A stretch of 64,000 nt of DNA from Octopus bimaculoides (taxonomy: Eukaryota). Every line of letters begins with the position of its first letter. Position 1 is the first letter of the stretch. Both the position numbers and the translations under genes were made by a program. Below, piece after piece: positions 22,132 through 44,078 of this stretch. The stretch covers positions 20,121,313-20,185,312 of the forward strand of contig NC_069003.1 in assembly GCF_001194135.2 (NCBI RefSeq), read 5' to 3'. The notes under the pieces were generated by a model that had not been told where the DNA came from, did no database searches, and saw only the letters and a list, made by a program, of their open reading frames with translations.

Positions 22132-23047
22132 GTGTGTATTCATTGTGAGCAACCAAAGCAGTATTAGTTCAAAGTAGCAATTTGTGTATTGTATTTAAAG
22201 CAGATACTTTTAGAAGCCTGCTAAACTGCAGTATCTATCTTTGAGATAGCATCTCTTACAGACGTATAGTGTTGAAAAAAAAACCCATAGAAATATATTA
22301 CCAATAGCAGACAAAATTCATCCAGCAGCAAGACAAATAACATTGTGCTCAGATGATAACTTCATAAATGAACAAAGAAAACATTGCAACAATTCCAAAC
22401 TGAAGTGCAAAATGGAAAACTGTAACTTCAACTGTCCACAATGCAAAATGAACCATCTGTACCACAGTAAGCATGCTCAGGTGAAAAGAGTAAATCCACA
22501 ACACTGAGTTGATGTATATCTAATGTCTCTTGATAAAGTGCCTCCCGATGAATCAACATAAGCTTAAATAATAAACAATGTGGGAGGGAAAAACATCACA
22601 TGATAGAATCATGCGCATTGATTGGATGATACTTAATAAACAATGTTTTGTGTCATGACAATTAGAGTTGTCTCAGTAAATACATATTTCTGCTTCTTTG
22701 GACTTTGTCAATAGTGAGTTTTCATCAGCAACCACATGCAGAGACAAAACCAGCCTCTACTGATATAGCAAAACAATGTTGCAATTAACCATCGAAAAAT
22801 ATGTCCTGATTAAGGGAAAATGTCATGTTGCTTGTGAACAGATCAGGGGTGGTGACAGGAAGATCTTTCTACCATAAGTCTGTCTTGACAAATTTCATTT
22901 GATTCATACAAGCATGGAAAAGTAGATGTGCAAGCAGTGATAACAATACTGACGATGATGGTGGTGATGGTGGTGTGGTGGTAATGATGATGTTCATGAT
23001 GGTGGTGTTGGTGGGTGTTTAAATTACTAACATGACTCTGATAGGAT

Positions 23048-23370
23048 TTAATCATTACATTGTTTCCTGTAATCCCATTCTTTTATCCTTTTCCACCATC
23101 CCCACCAGTTACTCTGTAGGGGCATGTTGTTGACCAGATTCAAATATTCATCACGTGTTTTATTAAAATGCCATTCTTCCAAGCAGGCATATGGTAAGTT
23201 TCTATAGAATTTGTTTGCAAACAGATATTTTTCTAAAGTAATTCGTTTGAGGTCTTGAAGTCCAAAAACACATACAGCACGTCTATAAGATCCGTAACAT
23301 ATATTTTTGTCTTTATTTTCTGTTTGCCAAACAACATGTTTTGCCAGTTTGTAAATCTGAGAATATGAAC
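23048..23370 (-). CDS. GCNT-family glycosyltransferase, terminal exon copy 2 (distal; alternative last exon or relic)
   Basis: Acceptor tttcaatttattccag, same phase 1, open for 107 codons. (S)SYSQIYKLAKHVVWQTENKDKNICYGSYRRAVCVFGLQDLKRITLEKYLFANKFYRNLPYACLEEWHFNKTRDEYLNLVNNMPLQSNWWGWWKRIKEWDYRKQCND*. Confidence 0.82.
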
Positions 23371-24216
23371 CTGGAATAAATTGAAATATATAACTATATC
23401 AGAAGAAATAAGATACATCAATACATGAAATAACACTGTGTAACATGGTTTTTGTCCTTGGGGAGTAACTGTTATTTCCTATTTGCTTACCCCTAGAAAG
23501 TATGAAAAACGGCTGATATTTCCTTCAAATTTTGCTTTTGTTACATTTATTCAAACCCCAAAGAATATTTCTCAATACATGGCTAAGATGCTCCCCCATT
23601 ACTCCTGCTCATGATCAGAGATGCACATATTGTCAGCCATTAAAGGACATGCCCAAGTGGTTAATGTCAAGCAACTGACCAGCAAATCTGTGGTATTGAG
23701 CAGAATATTTGCTATAACAAGATTTCTGCTTCAGCAACTCAGCACTGAATCTGTCTGAAATGTAATGGAAAGTAGGTCAGTTTCAAAACATTGATGTCCA
23801 GGTCACAAAAGCAAAGTTTGAAGGGAATAGTAGTCATTTCCTTTGGTTTCTAGATAGAAGCAAAGAGGAAATAACACTTACTCACCAAAGATAAAAACAA
23901 AGATTAAAATTTTGTTACACAGTATGCAAGCTGGCAGAATGGTTAGCACATTGAACGAAATGCTTGGTGGCACTTTTTCTGGCTCTTTATCTTCTGAATT
24001 CAAATCCAGCCAAGGTCAAATTTGCCTTTCATAACTTTGGGATCAATAAAATGAAGTACCAGTCCAATACTGGGGCTGATATAATTGATTTGTCACCTCC
24101 CTTCAGAATTACTGGCCTTGAACCTTGTAACTGATCAGCATCCCATTTAGAGAAAATATCGTGATACCAGTCACTTAATATGCCATGAAACCTAGGTTGT
24201 TACCTTATGGGTCCTA

Positions 24217-25473
24217 TAAGGATGGGCTGAAAAGTTCATAGGCTGACTATGAAGGAGTGATACTAGAACTGTGAAATTTTGCATGCTCTAATTTCAACTC
24301 TTCTTATTAATGACTGCATTGTTTCTCTCCAGGTAAACTGACATCTCACTGTTCAAAGAAGGCTTCAAAAGTAACTAGTTGTGATTTCTCTTGAAAATGG
24401 GGGAGGTTTGGCACTATGATGTTATCAAGTATCTGCAGAAAATGGGTTTAGTCCCCAAGGACATTAATGCTGACATGATTGCTACATTAGGGGATGACAC
24501 CCCAGCATTATCAACAGTGCAAAAGTGAGCAGCTGCATTTAGGAGAGGAAAAGAGGGTCATTAAGATGACCCAAGGTCTGGATGTCCTGCAACTGCTACA
24601 ACCAAGGAAAATATTGATCATGTTCACCACTGATGAATGACAGGCAATTGAGTATAAATCGAATAGCCAATGTTAATATATCTTGTGCGAGAGTTGAGAA
24701 TATTCTGCACAATTAACTTGGCATGGCAAAGGTTTCTGTTTGGTGGGTGCCATGTCTTCTGACAGCTGATGAAAAGTGCACCAGGCTGATCACATCAGGG
24801 GAAAATCTGACATTGTTTGAGGTAGATCCAGCTGGTTTCTTTGAATGTTTCCTCTGCCAATGGCTTCATCACTTTGAGTCAGACACAAAGACAATCCCTC
24901 TTCACCTGCTCCAATGAAGGCCAAGACCATTTTATCTGCAGGCAAGGTGATGGCCTCAGTTTTTGGGATGCAAAATGCATTGTATTTATTGAATTATTTC
25001 TAAAGGGCCACACTATCAATGAAAAGTACTATGCCAACTTTCTGAGGCAGTTATGAAAGGCTATCAAGACTAAATGCCCAGGAAAACTGACAAAAGGGGT
25101 TTTGTTTCATCAGGACAATTCTTCAGCACATAAGTCCTTGGTTTCAATGGCTGCTGCGCATGTCTGTGGCTTTGAACTAGTTGATCATCATCCCTATTCT
25201 GATTTGGTCCCATCTGACTTATCATCTGTTCCCCAATATAAAAAAAATGCTTGGCTGGGAACCATTGTTGCAGTGATGATGATGTCATATCTGCAGTTAA
25301 TGACTTTTCTGACTAACAGGATGAAAGCTTCTTCACCAATGGGATCGAAGCCTTGCAACACCGATGAAAGAAGTGTATGGACTGCAAGGAAGACTATGTT
25401 GAAAATAGACCTAATTTGGTCATGTTCCCTGAGAGTATCTTTGTCAGCCTATGAACTTTTTAGTTGACCCTTG
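24217..25473 (+). mobile_element. Near full-length mariner (irritans-like) pseudogene, copy 2
   Basis: Same TIRs as copy 1; WVPCLL, FHQDNSSAHKS and HPYSDLVPSD motifs; frameshifted. Confidence 0.88.
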
Positions 25474-25782
25474 CAGAGATGAAGAAAGATTTAAAAAATA
25501 CATGATGATTGATAGAAAATGAGAAATTGTATACAATGATTATTCTTTGGCTTTGGAAAGTTACATTGAGGCAAGCATCTTTTTTACTAGTTTCAGTCAT
25601 AAGACTGTGGCAATGGTAGGGCATTGCCCTGAAGGATTTTAGTCATATAAATCAACCCCAATGTTTTTTAAGCCTAGAATTTATTCTATTGGTCTCCTTT
25701 GCCAAACCATTAAGTTACAGGAGCTTAAGCACTCCAATACTACTTGTCAAGCAGTGGTGGGGAACAAACAGACACAGACACA

Positions 25783-25865
<83 letters not shown>

Positions 25866-26333
25866 TTCCATCTGCCAAATTCACTCACAAGGCTTTGGTT
25901 GGTCTGAGGTTATAGTAGAAGAGATTTGTCCAAGATTCCATGCAGTACGACTGAATCTGGAACCACACAGCCAAACCTACCTTGCATGGCTGTACTGTTA
26001 ACAATTTCACATCTGATCCATGCGGTTAGGGATTTGGTCCTACTGTCTGAATGTTGCCAGCTAGTGATTTATACCAGTAACTCCTAACCTTCTTTTAGCT
26101 CATGCCCTTCCCTGCATTGAATCTTGAATATTTCTGTGCTCCCCACTCTCCATGGCACTGTTAATGTAAATAGTACTTCAATTTTGTGTCATATGGTTAA
26201 TAGTAGAAACTGGTCTCTTTTAAAAAGAATTTTAAATCTTTAACAAAATTTGTAAAATTTATTAAATAATAACAAAATTTTAGACAGCTGAGTGGTTGAG
26301 AAACATTGCATTGTTTCTTGTAACCCCATTTTT

Positions 26334-26599
26334 TCACCACCCCCATCCATTACCCTGGATACGCATGTCATTGGCTAGATTCAAATATTCATCACGTGTT
26401 TTATTAAAATACCATTCTTCCATGCAAGCATATGCTAAGTTTTCCTCAAATTTATTTGCGAAAATATGCTCTTTTAATATAACATATTTAAGATCTTGAA
26501 GCCCCAAAATGCATACACTGTGTTTATAAGATCCAGAACATAGATTTTCTCCCTTCCAGGCAACAAATTTTGCTAATTTGTAAAGGTGAGAATGTGTAC
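26334..26599 (-). CDS. GCNT-family glycosyltransferase, terminal exon copy 1 (proximal)
   Basis: Acceptor tctttaatttcttccag, phase 1. (S)THSHLYKLAKFVAWKGENLCSGSYKHSVCILGLQDLKYVILKEHIFANKFEENLAYACMEEWYFNKTRDEYLNLANDMRIQGNGWGW*. GT14 C-terminal motifs CxG..VC..G..DL, FANKF and ACxEE are present. Confidence 0.88.
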
Positions 26600-26986
26600 C
26601 TGGAAGAAATTAAAGAGATACACAAATCAGGAGAAATAAGATAAATCAATACATGAAATAAATCAATAGATAAATAAGAAATTGTTTAATTACTCTAATT
26701 ATTCTTTGATTTCATATAGTCATATTAGTGCAGGCATGGGTGTATCATTATGAAATTCAACTTCTGATCTATGTGGTTTGGTCCTGCTGTGTGAAAGTTG
26801 TTGGGCAATAATCCAAACTATAGCTATGGGGATCAACCACTAATATCTTGTGGGTGTAATTGATAAACAGAATCTGAAGCCTTTCTGTGTGTGTGTGTAT
26901 GTGTGTGTGCATGCGCGAATGTATGTGTGTGTGTGTGTATGTATGTGTGAATCTGCATGTCTGTGTGCGTGAATGTATGTGTGAAT

Positions 26987-30412: not shown

Positions 30413-31608
30413 TAGGTTGGCAACTAAGTTCCTGCTATTTTTTTAAATTAAAATTTTTTAAAAGGTTTAATAAAAAAAATTACAACTAATTAATCAATAA
30501 TGTATTCATCCTTGTTGTTTACAACTTCTTCCCAAAGTTCAACAAGATTTTCAATACCTCGTTGGTAGAAATCACCCAATTTCGACTCGAAAAATTGATC
30601 CAACCAAGCTCTCAATTCTGCATCAGTATTGAACGACACTCTACGCATAACATTTGAAAAAGATCGAAACAGGTGTAAATCCATTGGTGCCAAATCAGGA
30701 GAGTATGGCGGGCATGGTGCCACTTCCCAGCCATGGCTTCCTTGGTCATATTGGTGATATGAGGGCAGGTGTTGTCGTGCAGCAGAACTCCATGCTGATG
30801 ATTAGGTCTTTTCCCTTGAATAGCTGTATTGAGTCGTTCCATCTGTTGAACATAGAGTTCCGCATTGACCGTTTGGTTCCATTCAAGCAATTTGTAATGG
30901 ATAATCCCTTTCCAGCCCCACCATATGCACAACATCGTGTTACGTGGATGAAGATCTTGTTTCATGTGTGGTGTCGTTTGTTTACTGGGGCTAAGCCATT
31001 CCTTATGCTGCTTCATATTAATGTACAGGAACCATTTTTTGTTGCCAGTTACAATTCAGTAAAGAAATCGTTGCTTGTGTACATGAGTTGAGTGGTGACA
31101 AGCAAGCAAACCAGCGAAGATTGTGGCTCGTTAATTTTTGTTGTTGTCACTTAAAGCATGCTCCATACTTCTGAACCTTTCCCAACGAGTAAAGATGCTT
31201 CTCTATAGCAGTGTGGGAGCATTCCATTTTCTTTACCAGTTCCCTTGTTGTTTGATGAGAATTTTCGTGCAAAAGTTGGTTTAATCACTCTTCATTGAAC
31301 TCAACTGGACAGCCAGAATGAGGTGCATCTTTGAGGCCAAAATTTCCATCTTTGAACTTGGCATACCAATCATGAGCGGTTCTTTCAGCTATGGCACCCT
31401 CTTCATACACAGCACAAATGTCGTGGGCAGCTTTTGCGGTCTTAGAACCGTGATTAAAAGCAAAAAGAAGAAGGTGTCGAAAATGCTCGTTTTTCTTAAC
31501 TTGGTATTCCATTTTAATGATCTGAAAATAAACAAAAATTAACTAAAAATAACTAGAAAAAAAAGCAAAATAGATTCCAAAATGATTCAAAAATAGAATT
31601 CTCAGAAA
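30413..31608 (-). mobile_element. Mariner (mellifera/capitata-like) pseudogene
   Basis: TIR taggttggcaactaagtt at 30413; MEYQVKKNEHFRHLLLFAF HTH, LLHDNTCPH and PYSPDLAPMD motifs. Both ends abut N-gaps. Confidence 0.88.
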
Positions 31609-33164: not shown

Positions 33165-34435
33165 CAACAACAGTGCGTTTGACCACCACCTTTCTGAATT
33201 ACTTCAAAGACATGATTTCATGCTCTCAATCAACTTCTGCTGCAGATCAAGTGGAAGCTCTTCCCAGGCCTTCTTTATTGCTGTTTTAAGTTCATCAACA
33301 GATGAATATTGCATACCTTCACTGTACCCAACATTTGTGAGATATCCCCAGGCATTCTCTATAGGATTAAGGTTGGAACTTCTTGTTGAGTTCAAACCCA
33401 ATTGCATGGAGGAAATCCAAAGTTGCCTTTGCTTTATGAATAGGGACACTGTCCTGTTGAAATATAAAGTTCTGGCCATGGAATTTCTTCCTTCTTCATC
33501 AATGTGAGCCCTGTCCAACATACCGATGTATCATGCAGCATTGAAACGGCCATCCATGATGACAAGTGGCAGCTTCCCATTGGTAGATATTGCTCCCCAC
33601 ACCATAAGACCTCTTTTGCTATTCAGTCACTTGGAATAAATAGAAATTTGTATACATTTATCTGCCCAGTAATACTTATAACCATTGGGGTCATCCAACT
33701 TCCATTTCTTCTCATCAGAGAACACAACTCTGGTCTATTCACTATCCCATGTCTGATGCTACCAAGCAAATACCAATCTAGCAGTTTTGTGGGAAGGGGA
33801 CAATAGCGGATGTCCTAGCTGCTTCTTCAGGTAGAAACCATTGTTCAGAATCACTCTTCTTATGGTGGATGTCAAGGCTCCTACTTCTGCTGATGCCTTC
33901 ATTCTGGAAACAGAAGAGCAGCATGACTTCTTCACAGCTCTGACAATGGCCCTTTCATCCCTTTCTGATGTGGTCTTAGGACGTCCATCAACATGAACCC
34001 TGTTGTAGCTGTCAGGATCTTTCAGAAAATTGTCTACTGGTATACTACTTCACTGAATCTTCTTGGCAATCTTCCAGTTACTCATTCCTTCCACTTTCAG
34101 TGAAAGAATCTTCCCTTGCTCAATTTCGGAAAGCTTCGTAGCTTTAGACATACTGGAAATATAACCTGAACCATGGAGATTACTGAATATTTTCTGAAAC
34201 AATTTGGAAAGAAATGAAAATATATTAGTGGCTTTATAGTTTTGAAGTGTTGATATGCTCGAGAAAATTAGAAAATCAGATGTTGTATTATGATAATAAA
34301 GATACAAGGTTTTCATTTCAATGTATTTATGAAATACTCATTTACAATATATTATGCCCCTTAGTCCACTTAAATACAGAGCTAAATTTCTAAATAACTT
34401 TAAAAAACATATGGCTTTATAGTTTTGTTGCCATC
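33165..34435 (-). mobile_element. Tc1/Tc3-like (DD34E) transposon pseudogene
   Basis: MSKATKLSEIEQGKILSL HTH, VVFSDEKKW, LMVWGAIS and SSNLNPIENAWG motifs; stops and frameshifts. Confidence 0.85.
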
Positions 34436-35781: not shown

Positions 35782-36017
35782 TATTATAAGGATGTGGTGA
35801 TCCAATATGTGTATTATAAAAAATGGTGGGGTATACAGATTCATCTGGAATAGTTGTGTTTCTTAGCCAATTTATTAATTCCTGAGCAATTTGGTTATTG
35901 ACTGTATAGTTTATAAAGTCTCGAGTTACTGCAACGTAATGTGACCCTTTAGCTAAAGTGATATTGTGTGGTACCGGTTTCTGTTTTAATGCTCTCCTCC
36001 ATCTATGTATCCAACTT
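35782..36017 (-). CDS. GCNT-family glycosyltransferase, second coding exon (catalytic PDE motif)
   Basis: Not in the ORF track. Acceptor ttacttttctgcag, donor A|gtaagt, phase 2 to 1, 236 nt. (R)SWIHRWRRALKQKPVPHNITLAKGSHYVAVTRDFINYTVNNQIAQELINWLRNTTIPDESVYPTIFYNTHIGSPHPYN contains KGSxY and PDE. Confidence 0.9.
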
Positions 36018-38139: not shown

Positions 38140-38945
38140 TACTGGAGGTTTGTACTGTTTGTCATGTCACAACAAGGATCTCAGATAGACAGTATTCTAC
38201 ACAATATGCGTGCAGATCCAAGTAATGCCAACTTTTACAATACACCTAGATTGTAGAGTATTTCTAAAGTTTTCAGATGTTTTTTTCAGATTGGGTGGTA
38301 TTGAACCCAATGCTTTGATGACAATAAGGATAACCTTTATGTTTGACTCTTGTAGCTGCCACATCTTAGTGATCTCAATTCTCAGGTCTCCATATTTATC
38401 AACCTTTTCTCTTTCTTTCATGATGATATGTTGATCTCCTGGCACTGTCATGTCAATTATTAGGCACTCTTGTTTGTCCCTCCTAAAGGTTACTATATCT
38501 GGCCTTTGGTGCTCTAATATCTTGTCTGTCTGGAAGTCAAAGTCCCAGAGGATTTTTGCCTTCCCCTTTTCGTCCATTACCTTTTCTGGTGCATGTTGGT
38601 ACCAAGCACTCGTTACCTCATATCTATATCTATGGCACAGTAGCCAGTGGAGGTTTTGGGCTACCTTGTCATGTCTGTGCAAGACTTTCACAAGAACTAA
38701 CAATGTGAGTCACACTTTTGACCCTCTTCCCACACATTCTGCAGAGGTCTTTTGCACTTATGTGGTATATATTATTTTTCACTGAGTTGGTATTCAATGC
38801 CTGGTCCTGGGCAGCGATGATTAGGCTTTCAGCATTCTTTCTTAGGTCACCTTTATTAAGCCACCTCCATGATGCTTCCTGGTCTTTTAATTTGTTGGTT
38901 TCACAGTGGAACTTTCCATGTAATTCCATGCAGAGTAGGGTCTCT
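38140..38945 (-). mobile_element. R4/Dong-type CCHC plus RLE endonuclease fragment (copy c)
   Basis: LHGKF..SWRWLNKGDL..ESLIIAAQDQAL..CRMCG..VTHIVSSC..HRHDKVA..ILWDFDFQTD..RPDIV..IIDMTVP..EKVDKY. Confidence 0.88.
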
Positions 38946-38975
38946 TCTCTCTTGCTGGCTGTTCTTGATCAGGAT

Positions 38976-39360: not shown

Positions 39361-39932
39361 CTCTATTTNNNNNNNNNNNNNNNNNNNNNNNNNNNNNNNN
39401 NNNNNNNNNNNNNNNNNNNNNNNNNNNNNNNNNNNNNNNNNNNNNNNNNNNNNNNNNNNNNNNNNNNNNNNNNNNNNNNNNNNNNNNNNNNNNNNNNNNN
39501 NNNNNNNNNNNNNNNNNNNNNNNNNNNNNNNNNNNNNNNNNNNNNNNNNNNNNNNNNNNNNNNNNNNNNNNNNNNNNNNNNNNNNNNNNNNNNNNNNNNN
39601 NNNNNNNNNNNNNNNNNNNNNNNNNNNNNNNNNNNNNNNNNNNNNNNNNNNNNNNNNNNNNNNNNNNNNNNNNNNNNNNNNNNNNNNNNNNNNNNNNNNN
39701 NNNNNNNNNNNNNNNNNNNNNNNNNNNNNNNNNNNNNNNNNNNNNNNNNNNNNNNNNNNNNNNNNNNNNNNNNNNNNNNNNNNNNNNNNNNNNNNNNNNN
39801 NNNNNNNNNNNNNNNNNNNGCTGGAGAGAGTGAGCTAATGTGCAGCATGAATATTTGATCACTATAAACAAATCATCTGTGCTGGTTGTTAGGCAAAAGC
39901 TGAATACTCATACATTGCCTTCAATGGGAGAG

Positions 39933-43347: not shown

Positions 43348-44078
43348 CTGAAGTCAAGGTCGACAATATTTTCGCCATTAAGTCCTCGAAGAAACCTGAT
43401 TATCTGAAGATTAGTTTTTAAAGGGAAGTCCATTCCACAGAGATTAATGTAATAACGCCATGATGAAAAGCGCAACAAATCTCTCATCACTACCAGATCT
43501 GCTTCAACAAGACTAAAATCACCCCACTTTATATTAAATCTTTTACTGCTTAGAAACACATTTGGGAAGCATTCAGTAATTGATTTGACAACATGGTAGT
43601 CATGAATGGCAGCTTTTTGGTCCAGATGGATGACATATATGTTCTGTGGACGGTATATTGCTCTTAGAAGTTGTTCCATTTGTGTGACTTGATTATAAAA
43701 GAATATTCCATAGGCAATTGGGAACGATTCCTCTTCTATTGTCATACTGTTCATGAAGTATCCTCTTTCAGTTATAAACCTTGAGCAGTTTGCTGACAGC
43801 TTCAACAAGTCTTGTGCAGGATGTGGATATTTCTTTGCTTCCTTCTCTAATTCAGGTGATGTTCGAAAATCGTTATCATAAATCTTGGCACAGTTAAAAG
43901 AATCAACTTTGCGATTTGATAGTGTCATGAAAGTTTTCCTTACAAATTCTGATTTTAACATTGGTATTGACTTTCTTTTCCTGCTAGTAAACATTATTAC
44001 TATCATAATAAGGATGAATAAAATTACAAGTGTTGAATTAAATTTTCTTATTGAAGACACTTTTCTCCGAAAGTTCAT
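43348..44078 (-). CDS. Core-2/I-branching beta-1,6-N-acetylglucosaminyltransferase (GT14, GCNT family), first coding exon
   Basis: Type II membrane anchor LVILFILIMIVIMF, then FPIAYGIFFY..LLRAIYRPQNIYVIHLD, CFPNVF, WGDFSLVEADL and WRYYINLCGMDFPLKTN. Donor AG|gtatg at 43348/43347 (phase 2). Orthology to a specific GCNT cannot be assigned by eye. Confidence 0.92.

What the first reader, a model, noticed from the sequence alone, without database searches (positions are those of the whole stretch)
23048..26599. GT14 glycosyltransferase with two intact, tandemly duplicated last exons (candidate mutually exclusive C-termini)
Seen: downstream of exon 36017-35782 (ends in phase 1) there are two paralogous exons, each with a good AG acceptor, the same phase, no internal stop and its own stop codon. 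By hand alignment they share 54 of 87 residues (~62%), and their only length difference before the proximal stop is in frame (4 codons, KDKN). All three C-terminal Cys, GLQDL, FANKF and the FNKTRDEYLNL block are kept in both. No other GCNT exon lies between them, so the distal copy can only be used by splicing from the shared upstream exons. Inference: one gene makes two enzymes differing in the donor-binding C-terminal lobe. Vertebrate GCNT2 is known to diversify with alternative first exons; this would be the mirror arrangement. I cannot check whether it is already annotated.
Basis: partly seen in the sequence, partly recalled or inferred. Interest (0 to 1): 0.75.

Follow-up and report, generated by a model that had tools for sequence, protein, structure and literature searches.

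The report
Octopus glycosyltransferase gene, two alternative last exons
An Octopus bimaculoides sugar-branching enzyme gene (GT14 family) has a duplicated last coding exon giving two alternative protein tails, a real and conserved arrangement, but one that public annotation already lists as two isoforms and that belongs to a well-known class of alternative splicing.

Summary
On the minus strand lies one GT14 (Pfam Branch) gene: exon 1 at 44078-43348, exon 2 at 36017-35782, a proximal last exon P at 26599-26334 and a distal last exon D at 23370-23048. P and D share 54 of 87 residues.

It is already annotated. The window is identical to the O. bimaculoides chromosome assembly. The two spliced products match two O. 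bimaculoides RefSeq proteins exactly (410 aa and 429 aa). O. sinensis carries the same pair as isoforms X2 and X1, and the O. vulgaris genome holds both exons in the same order.

The duplication is old (P-D dS about 0.78, against about 0.09 between species). Long-term evolution was constrained (omega 0.23, p=1e-5). Since the species split, omega is near 1 for both copies, resting on only 2-4 synonymous changes.

The swapped exon encodes the two cationic residues that bind the UDP phosphate in mouse C2GnT-L. D keeps the Arg378 equivalent. P has His there in all three species.

The arrangement is alternative terminal exons (splice-site choice plus poly(A) choice), not strict mutually exclusive splicing. 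I could not inspect RNA reads. Interest is low to moderate.

The parts
43348..44078 (-). Coding exon 1 (ATG at 44078; ends in phase 2, TTCAG|GTATGA). It encodes the short cytoplasmic tail, the hydrophobic signal-anchor (LVILFILIMIVIMF), the stem and the first two-thirds of the GT14 domain.
   Evidence: tblastn 100%; Pfam Branch begins at residue 121.
35782..36017 (-). Coding exon 2, shared by all isoforms. It ends in phase 1 and contains the PDE motif whose Glu aligns with the catalytic base E320 of C2GnT-L.
   Evidence: PMC5992326 for E320.
34180..34193 (-). Start of a third alternative terminal exon inside a Tc1/Tc3-like transposon remnant (acceptor ...tttcag|AAAATATTCAGTAA, reading KNIQ*). 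It gives the truncated 326-aa RefSeq isoform, which lacks the whole C-terminal exon.
   Evidence: P0090 ends ...PHPYNKNIQ; acceptor located; Pfam HTH_Tnp_Tc3_2 at 33762-34049.
26626..26661 (-). Conserved 36-nt intron element (TTATTTCATGTATTGATTTATCTTATTTCTCCTGAT), 27-62 nt upstream of the P acceptor. Likely the branch-point and regulatory region.
   Evidence: Over the 38 alignment columns that hold the element, 35 of 38 are identical to the D copy, although exon dS is 0.78; it is conserved in all six sequences.
26334..26599 (-). Proximal last coding exon P (88 codons including the split Ser, stop TGA at 26336-26334). Its product is the 410-aa isoform. It has His at the C2GnT-L Arg378 position (SYKHSVC).
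26258..26263 (-). AATAAA poly(A) signal 71 nt after the P stop. It sits in a 3' UTR stretch that is 86 of 87 identical between O. bimaculoides and O. sinensis.
26347..26522 (-). Two GT donor-like sites inside exon P: CACAGT|GTATGC (GT at 26516-26515) and CCAGG|GTAATG (GT at 26353-26352). Gene models of related species use the orthologous sites to join P to the D acceptor.
   Evidence: O. sinensis X3 (P0087, out of frame) and the O. vulgaris 508-aa model (P0002, in frame).
23398..23433 (-). Second copy of the conserved intron element, 28-63 nt upstream of the D acceptor.
23048..23370 (-). Distal last coding exon D (107 codons including the split Ser, stop TAA at 23050-23048). Its product is the 429-aa isoform. 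It keeps Arg at the Arg378 position (SYRRAVC). An ATTAAA overlaps the stop codon (23052-23047).

Best explanation
An old tandem duplication copied a unit of about 430 bp. The unit held the last ~62 nt of intron 2, the terminal coding exon and the start of its 3' UTR. It sits inside an Octopus GT14 (core-2/I-branching type) beta-1,6-N-acetylglucosaminyltransferase-like gene.

The gene now has two homologous alternative terminal exons. If the exon-2 donor (35782) pairs with the first acceptor (26599), the message ends at the P stop and the AATAAA 71 nt further on. That gives a 410-aa type II membrane protein. If that acceptor is skipped and the P poly(A) site is not used first, the donor pairs with the second acceptor (23370). 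That gives a 429-aa protein.

The two proteins share residues 1-322 and differ in the last quarter of the catalytic domain. That quarter holds the strand with the invariant Trp, a loop of different length, the C372-C381-type disulfide, both residues that hold the UDP beta-phosphate in C2GnT-L, and the Cys that ties the C-terminus to the stem. D carries the canonical Arg/Lys pair. P carries Lys-His plus Lys.

Shown here: the exon anatomy, identity to the annotated isoforms, conservation in three species, long-term purifying selection, and compatibility of both tails with the fold. Inferred: that both messages are made in useful amounts, that exon choice is regulated, and that the two enzymes differ in activity.
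For: Gene model and exact identity to RefSeq isoforms in O. bimaculoides. The same isoform pair is annotated in O. sinensis. Same exon order, acceptors, phase and open frames in O. sinensis and O. vulgaris DNA. P and D fall into clean orthologous groups, so there was no conversion after the species split.

P-D dS is 0.75-0.78, dN 0.22-0.25, omega 0.28-0.33, p about 1e-4. On the branch before speciation omega is 0.23, p=1e-5. Both copies keep all 6 invariant columns of the family alignment, and in O. bimaculoides also all 5 nearly invariant ones. Both score equally against a profile of non-octopus homologues, 61-69 bits.

The intron element upstream of both acceptors is 35 of 38 identical despite dS 0.78. 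The P 3' UTR with AATAAA is 86 of 87 identical between species, against about 88-92% in surrounding non-coding DNA.

AlphaFold2 models have pLDDT 82.6 (D isoform) and 83.6 (P isoform). The alternative segment is mostly 75-90 in P. In D it is mostly 82-90, lower at the start of the exon and in the longer loop. Both models match 2GAK/3OTK with target-normalised TM about 0.8. Arg378 and Lys401 map into the alternative exon (PMC3961637, PMC5992326).
Against: No RNA reads or transcript contigs could be examined. No transcriptome-derived protein with either junction is in the protein collection.

Since the O. bimaculoides / O. sinensis split, omega is 0.7-0.9 for P and 1.2-1.4 for D, against 0.43-0.45 for exons 1-2. 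The counts are only 2-4 synonymous changes per exon, and the contrast with exons 1-2 is not significant (p=0.12).

P in O. sinensis and O. vulgaris has changed conserved residues: FANKF to FVNKF and NKTR to NKTC in both, and GLQDL to GLEDF in O. sinensis (GLEDL in O. vulgaris). The D tail after WW is frameshifted between species. D has no canonical AATAAA within 1.5 kb, only an ATTAAA that overlaps the stop codon. His at the Arg378 position could mean the P isoform is inactive, since R378A abolishes activity in C2GnT-L (PMC3961637).
Confidence: 0.75

Rival explanations
1. Only one of the two exons is biologically used. The other is a slowly decaying duplicate picked up by rare splicing noise, and the automatic annotation turned that noise into an isoform.
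For: Recent omega is near 1 for both copies, with D slightly above 1. Conserved-motif substitutions have accumulated in P of O. sinensis and O. vulgaris, and P has His at the essential Arg378 position. The D tail is frameshifted and D lacks a nearby canonical poly(A) signal. Other odd models at this locus show that annotation here includes dubious junctions: O. sinensis X3 is out of frame and the O. vulgaris model reads through P into D.
Against: The pre-speciation branch has omega 0.23, whereas one neutral copy would push the pairwise value to 0.5 or more. Both frames are open in three species, while neutral drift keeps them open in only 1-5% of simulations. Both copies keep every invariant family residue and score equally against the family profile. 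Both keep the upstream intron element and the acceptor. The P 3' UTR is more conserved than background.
Confidence: 0.17
2. Both exons are included in series. P is spliced through its internal in-frame donor (CCAGG|GTAATG) to D, giving one protein with a repeated C-terminal segment, as in the O. vulgaris 508-aa model.
For: The donor-like site is present in the window (GT at 26353-26352), is in phase with the D acceptor, and is used in the deposited O. vulgaris model CAI9739411.1.
Against: The same O. vulgaris model also reads through a transposon-derived exon, so it looks like an ab initio join. RefSeq models in two species end at the P stop instead. A GT-A domain with its last quarter repeated has no counterpart among the 25 homologues aligned.
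Confidence: 0.05
3. D belongs to a separate gene, or the tandem arrangement is an assembly artefact.
For: The window contains many N gaps, including one in intron 1. It is the same sequence as the current O. bimaculoides assembly, so that assembly is not an independent check.
Against: Two separate assemblies of other species have the same exon1-exon2-P-D order, with 3.2-3.8 kb between P and D. The 2.6 kb between P and D aligns between species at 92%. There are no other GT14 exons anywhere in the 64 kb. D starts with an acceptor in the phase left open by exon 2.
Confidence: 0.02

Closest known systems
C-terminal substitutions derived from tandem exon duplication (homologous alternative last exons), e.g. 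human GNAO1, PRKCB, FBLN1
   Same: A duplicated 3' coding exon, with each copy carrying its own stop. The isoforms are identical except for a homologous C-terminal segment. The choice is made through splice-site use plus alternative poly(A) use. 77 of 236 curated human events of this origin are C-terminal (PMC8373072).
   Different: The gene family (GT14 glycosyltransferase) and the lineage (octopus) differ. Here the swapped segment contains catalytic-site residues. No expression or protein evidence was examined here.
Vertebrate GCNT2 (I-branching enzyme) with alternative first coding exons 1A/1B/1C
   Same: Same enzyme family. One gene yields several enzymes by substituting one coding exon while sharing the rest (PMC5147899).
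   Different: GCNT2 varies the first coding exon and shares exons 2 and 3. The octopus gene varies the last exon. Homology of the two events was not tested and is not implied.
Mouse leukocyte core 2 beta1,6-GlcNAc transferase C2GnT-L / GCNT1 (PDB 2GAK, 2GAM, 3OTK)
   Same: Best solved relative of both isoforms (E about 1e-60, 34% identity, target-normalised TM about 0.8). The catalytic Glu, Lys401, the C372-C381 pair and the stem-to-C-terminus Cys are all aligned.
   Different: The P isoform has His instead of Arg378. Both octopus tails carry the mollusc-type extension FNKTRDEYLNL. The substrate is unknown.
Internal mutually exclusive exon clusters with docking/selector RNA pairing (Dscam, 14-3-3 zeta, ATE1)
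   Same: Tandem homologous exons, each preceded by a conserved intron element.
   Different: The exons here are terminal, so exclusivity follows from the stop and poly(A) site. No sequence complementary to the element beyond chance was found in intron 2.

Membership tests
GT14 (Pfam Branch, core-2/I-branching enzymes) | Significant match to the Branch domain profile | tested here: met
   PF02485 E=1e-39 (P isoform) and 6e-38 (D isoform), far above the cut-off.
GT14 (Pfam Branch, core-2/I-branching enzymes) | GT-A fold like C2GnT-L | tested here: met
   AlphaFold2 models with pTM 0.81-0.82. Foldseek E about 1e-30 and target-normalised TM 0.78-0.81 to 2GAK/3OTK for both isoforms.
GT14 (Pfam Branch, core-2/I-branching enzymes) | Catalytic base Glu (E320 of C2GnT-L) in the PDE motif | tested here: met
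   E303 in shared exon 2. The same column holds E in 23 of 25 homologues (PMC5992326).
GT14 (Pfam Branch, core-2/I-branching enzymes) | Two cationic residues that replace the metal ion (Arg378 and Lys401) | tested here: inconclusive
   The Lys401 equivalent is kept in P and D. The Arg378 equivalent is Arg in D but His in P, in all three species. 22 of 25 homologues have Arg. So the feature is met for D and not met for P.
GT14 (Pfam Branch, core-2/I-branching enzymes) | Conserved cysteines of the catalytic domain; type II signal-anchor | tested here: met
   C63, C98, C170, C347, C356 and C385 are invariant columns. There is an N-terminal hydrophobic stretch at residues 17-30, modelled as a helix.
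GT14 (Pfam Branch, core-2/I-branching enzymes) | beta-1,6-GlcNAc transfer to core 1, core 3 or i-antigen acceptors | not testable with these tools
   Needs an enzyme assay. The product name in RefSeq is by homology only.
Alternative last exons from tandem exon duplication | Two adjacent homologous exons in one gene, with the same acceptor phase and each with its own stop | tested here: met
Alternative last exons from tandem exon duplication | Both exons present and intact in orthologues | tested here: met
   O. sinensis and O. vulgaris. Deeper cephalopods were not available.
Alternative last exons from tandem exon duplication | Purifying selection on both copies | tested here: inconclusive
   On the old branch omega is 0.23 (p=1e-5). 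On recent branches omega is 0.7-1.4, with 2-4 synonymous changes per exon.
Alternative last exons from tandem exon duplication | Own poly(A) signal after each exon | tested here: inconclusive
   P has a conserved AATAAA at +71. D has only an ATTAAA overlapping the stop codon, and the next AATAAA is at +1561.
Alternative last exons from tandem exon duplication | Transcripts with each junction | not testable with these tools
   Both are RefSeq models in two species. The reads behind those models could not be seen, and no transcript-derived proteins are in the collection.
Strict mutually exclusive exons with competing RNA structures | Internal exons; a docking site complementary to the selector upstream of each variant | tested here: not met
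   The exons are terminal. The longest complement to the conserved element in intron 2 is 9 nt or less, no better than shuffled controls in three species.

The most novel reading that the evidence does not exclude
Choice of the 3' terminal exon switches this Golgi glycosyltransferase between two forms. One is canonical, with the Arg/Lys pair that binds the UDP-sugar diphosphate (D). The other has the essential Arg replaced by His with a neighbouring Lys, plus a loop 4-5 residues shorter next to the invariant-Trp strand (P). This difference is fixed in three species. P would then be a pH-gated enzyme, an enzyme of altered specificity, or an inactive regulatory partner. That would make it a rare case of active-site chemistry being exchanged by alternative polyadenylation.
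Probability: 0.25. Interest if true: 0.55.

Novelty: already known. Interest (0 to 1): 0.25.

Why it matters
As a discovery it matters little. Both isoforms are already RefSeq proteins (two accession series in O. bimaculoides, and isoforms X1/X2 in O. sinensis), and homologous alternative terminal exons are a recognised class.

Three points add something. First, the two tails are shown to be paralogous exons from a duplication roughly eight times older, by dS, than the O. bimaculoides / O. sinensis split. Second, the swapped exon carries both residues that substitute for the metal ion in GT14 enzymes. Third, the proximal copy has a fixed Arg-to-His change at a position where alanine substitution abolishes activity in the mouse enzyme.

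That gives a simple, testable case of alternative 3'-end processing changing a glycosyltransferase active site. I found no paper that discusses it.

Tried and rejected
(1) Docking/selector RNA pairing. I searched intron 2 of three species for complements to the conserved 36-nt element upstream of both acceptors. The longest matches were 9 nt or less, equal to shuffled controls. A first attempt with RNAduplex timed out. Rejected.

(2) Transcript evidence. Exact look-up of both isoforms returned only the NCBI genome record for the D isoform and nothing for the P isoform. The protein clusters contain no transcriptome-derived members. So there is no independent RNA evidence.

(3) An independent 'better assembly' of O. 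bimaculoides. The chromosome-level record is base-for-base the same as the window over 27 kb, gaps included. It is therefore not an independent test, and I used O. sinensis and O. vulgaris instead.

(4) Recent gene conversion as the cause of the identical patches. P and D sequences group by copy, not by species. Conversion after the species split is rejected. Older conversion cannot be excluded.

(5) Which copy is more canonical. Profile scores are equal. Only the Arg378 column, FANKFY and the longer tail favour D.

(6) A missing exon in the N gap of intron 1. Phases fit without one, and the O. sinensis intron (about 2.2 kb, no gap) gives a colinear protein.

(7) Literature. Searches for octopus GCNT and for the accession numbers found nothing relevant.

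(8) The first dN/dS run on exons 1+2 used an exon-2 start off by one base. It was corrected.
Full report
WHAT IS THERE

Reading the minus strand gives a three-exon coding gene.
- Exon 1 runs 44078-43348. It starts at the ATG and ends ...TTCAG|GTATGA in phase 2.
- Exon 2 runs 36017-35782. Its acceptor is ctgcag| and it ends AAT A|GTAAGT in phase 1.
- Two candidate terminal exons follow. P runs 26599-26334 with TGA at 26336-26334. D runs 23370-23048 with TAA at 23050-23048.
- Both terminal exons follow ...ttccag|GT, so each completes the split codon as AGT (Ser).

tblastn of the pieces against the 64-kb window finds only these four segments. Both spliced products hit Pfam Branch (PF02485) at E about 1e-39. 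Both hit mouse C2GnT-L (2GAK) at E about 1e-60.

The codon alignment gives 54 identical of 87 (62%) and one in-frame gap of 4 codons. The three Cys, GLQDL, FANKF and FNKTRDEYLNL are in both copies.

IT IS ALREADY ANNOTATED

The homologue search returned three Octopus clusters. Exact comparison gives:
- Exons 1+2+P is identical to XP_052831942.1 / XP_014789352.1 (410 aa).
- Exons 1+2+D is identical to XP_052831941.1 / XP_014789351.1 (429 aa).
- Both are O. bimaculoides RefSeq proteins, present under two accession series (XP_0147..., also held in EukProt, and XP_0528...).

The window is base-for-base the chromosome assembly GCA_001194135.2 CM046623.1 over 27 kb. O. sinensis has the same pair: XP_029649955.1 isoform X2 (410 aa, P) and XP_029649954.1 isoform X1 (425 aa, D).

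Three further models exist.
- O. bimaculoides XP_014789353.1 (326 aa) ends KNIQ*. It uses an acceptor at 34194/34193 inside a Tc1/Tc3-like transposon remnant in intron 2.
- O. sinensis X3 (396 aa) joins an internal donor in P (CACAGT|GTATGC) to the D acceptor, out of frame.
- O. vulgaris CAI9739411.1 (508 aa) reads through the transposon exon, then P, then D through the in-frame donor CATG|GTAATG. This looks like an ab initio join.

From general knowledge of the NCBI pipeline, alternative variants are issued when transcript alignments support them. That is an inference, because I could not see the reads. No transcriptome-derived protein with either junction is in the collection.

CONSERVATION AND AGE

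I fetched the O. sinensis (L002) and O. vulgaris (L003) loci. Both have exon 1, exon 2, P and D in the same order. P and D lie 3.8 kb apart, against 3.2 kb in O. bimaculoides. Acceptor contexts, phase and open frames are the same. The six-sequence DNA alignment groups sequences by copy, not by species, so there has been no conversion since speciation.

The duplicated unit runs from about 62 nt upstream of the acceptor to about 90 nt past the P stop. The DNA after the P stop is homologous to the D coding tail. A 10-nt deletion created the earlier TGA in P.

Nei-Gojobori estimates:

| Comparison | dS | dN | omega | p |
|---|---|---|---|---|
| P vs D within a species | 0.75-0.78 | 0.22-0.25 | 0.28-0.33 | about 1e-4 |
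| Parsimony ancestors, ancP vs ancD (pre-speciation branch) | 0.61 | 0.14 | 0.23 | 1e-5 |
| Exons 1+2, O. bimaculoides vs O. sinensis/O. vulgaris | 0.10 | 0.043 | 0.43-0.45 | <0.01 |
| P orthologues, pairwise | 0.09 | 0.06-0.07 | 0.73-0.80 | not significant |
| D orthologues, pairwise | 0.06 | 0.07 | 1.15-1.23 | not significant |

- Recent branches summed give about 0.9 for P and about 1.4 for D. Each rests on only 2-3 synonymous changes, or 3-4 in the pairwise counts.
- The contrast between the last exons and exons 1+2 is not significant (p=0.12).
- The long-term signal is therefore clear constraint. The recent signal is uninformative, or suggests relaxation in both tails.
- Simulated neutral drift at 0.3-0.78 substitutions per site leaves the 87 codons free of stops in only 1-5% of runs.
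- Both copies keep all invariant columns of a 29-sequence family alignment. Both score alike (61-69 bits) against a profile of non-octopus homologues.
- By dS the duplication is about eight times older than the O. bimaculoides / O. sinensis split. Its presence in other cephalopods could not be checked.

SPLICING AND 3'-END SIGNALS

A 36-nt intron element lies 27-63 nt upstream of each acceptor. Over the 38 alignment columns that hold it, 35 of 38 are identical between P and D, although exon dS is 0.78. It is conserved across all six sequences. I read it as the branch-point or regulatory region, kept for both acceptors. That is hard to explain if one exon were dead.

The idea that it acts as a selector pairing with a docking site failed. 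No complement longer than chance occurs in intron 2 of any species.

P has an AATAAA 71 nt after its stop in all three species. The 87 nt from the stop through this signal are 86 of 87 identical between species, against 88-92% in surrounding non-coding DNA. D has only an ATTAAA overlapping its stop codon, and the next AATAAA is 1.5 kb away. Its 3' end is therefore undefined here. The D tail after WW is frameshifted between species by an 8-nt indel, so it is not constrained.

WHAT THE SWAPPED SEGMENT DOES

The alignment to 2GAK (chain index + 37 = mouse numbering) places the following within the alternative exon:
- the invariant Trp (W356);
- the following loop, where P is 4-5 residues shorter than D;
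- the C372-C381 pair;
- Arg378, Lys401 and Cys413.

In the closed C2GnT-L complex, Arg378 and Lys401 contact the UDP beta-phosphate, and replacing either with alanine abolishes activity (PMC3961637; see also PMC5992326). The catalytic Glu lies in shared exon 2.

D has Arg at the Arg378 column (SYRRAVC / SFRRSVC). P has His preceded by Lys (SYKHSVC) in all three species. 22 of 25 other homologues have Arg. Lys401 is kept in both.

The AlphaFold2 models have mean pLDDT 82.6 (D isoform) and 83.6 (P isoform). In P the alternative segment is mostly 75-90. In D it is mostly 82-90, with lower values at the start of the exon (about 54) and in the longer loop (about 71). The secondary-structure pattern is the same in both. 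Both isoforms have low-confidence extreme tails. Both models superpose on 2GAK/3OTK with target-normalised TM about 0.8. Whether P is active, pH-dependent or regulatory is open.

COMPARISON WITH WHAT IS KNOWN

Homologous C-terminal substitutions from duplicated 3' coding exons, chosen through alternative poly(A) use, are a described class. They make up 77 of 236 curated human tandem-duplication events, including GNAO1, PRKCB and FBLN1. By strict definition they are not 'mutually exclusive splicing' (PMC8373072).

GCNT2 diversifies through three alternative first coding exons (PMC5147899). The octopus gene is the C-terminal counterpart within the same family, but nothing suggests a shared origin. 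I found no paper on this locus.

VERDICT

This is a real, conserved, old tandem duplication of the terminal coding exon that gives two annotated isoforms. It is an ordinary mechanism and is already in RefSeq. The one point of interest is the fixed Arg-to-His difference at a catalytic-site position. Interest 0.25.

Noticed in passing
window 34180-34193 (-), within 33207-34337: A Tc1/Tc3-like transposase remnant in intron 2 (Pfam HTH_Tnp_Tc3_2). It supplies an acceptor and an immediate stop (KNIQ*). This matches the truncated 326-aa RefSeq isoform, and the orthologous fragment is read through in the O. vulgaris 508-aa model.
   Followed up: partly
window 30493-31542 (-): A mariner/Mos1-type transposase remnant in intron 2 (Pfam Transposase_1 E=1e-21, HTH_48 E=6e-18). 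The reading frame is broken into pieces.
   Followed up: partly
window 25102-25467 (+) and 25790-25870: Between P and D there is a stretch that looks by eye like the C-terminal part of a mariner-type transposase (HQDN..PYSDLVPSD), with no Pfam hit, and a long (GT)n microsatellite. The whole 2.6-kb spacer aligns to O. sinensis at 92%, so these insertions predate the species split.
   Followed up: partly
window 26626-26661 and 23398-23433 (-): A 36-nt intron element upstream of both alternative acceptors is far better conserved between the paralogous copies (35 of 38 alignment columns) than the exons are at synonymous sites. No complementary partner was found in intron 2.
   Followed up: yes
window 26511-26522 and 26347-26358 (-): Two GT donor-like sites lie inside exon P. 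Gene models in O. sinensis (out of frame) and O. vulgaris (in frame) use the orthologous sites to splice P onto D. It is unknown whether such transcripts are real or subject to decay.
   Followed up: partly
window 23048-23110 (-); L002 14800-14839; L003 14985-15023: The C-terminal tail of D is frameshifted between O. bimaculoides (…WWGWWKRIKEWDYRKQCND) and O. sinensis/O. vulgaris (…WWKRIERMGLQETT/M) by an 8-nt indel. In P a 10-nt deletion created the earlier stop. The extreme tail is evidently unconstrained.
   Followed up: yes
window 22940-23030 (-): Immediately after the D stop there is a CAC/CAT-rich microsatellite (it would read as poly-His/Thr). It is present but variable in all three species.
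   Followed up: no
window 38672-38968 (-), 39369-39819: Intron 1 holds a weak reverse-transcriptase zinc-binding match (zf-RVT, E=0.0015, below the cut-off) and a 451-nt N gap. Intron 1 is about 7.3 kb here but about 2.2 kb in O. sinensis, so most of it is lineage-specific repeat insertion.
   Followed up: no
L002 10695-10960 and L003 10884-11149: In O. sinensis and O. vulgaris the P exon has changed family-conserved residues: FANKF to FVNKF and NKTR to NKTC (a new Cys) in both, and GLQDL to GLEDF in O. sinensis (GLEDL in O. vulgaris). This may be a sign of relaxed constraint on P in that lineage.
   Followed up: partly
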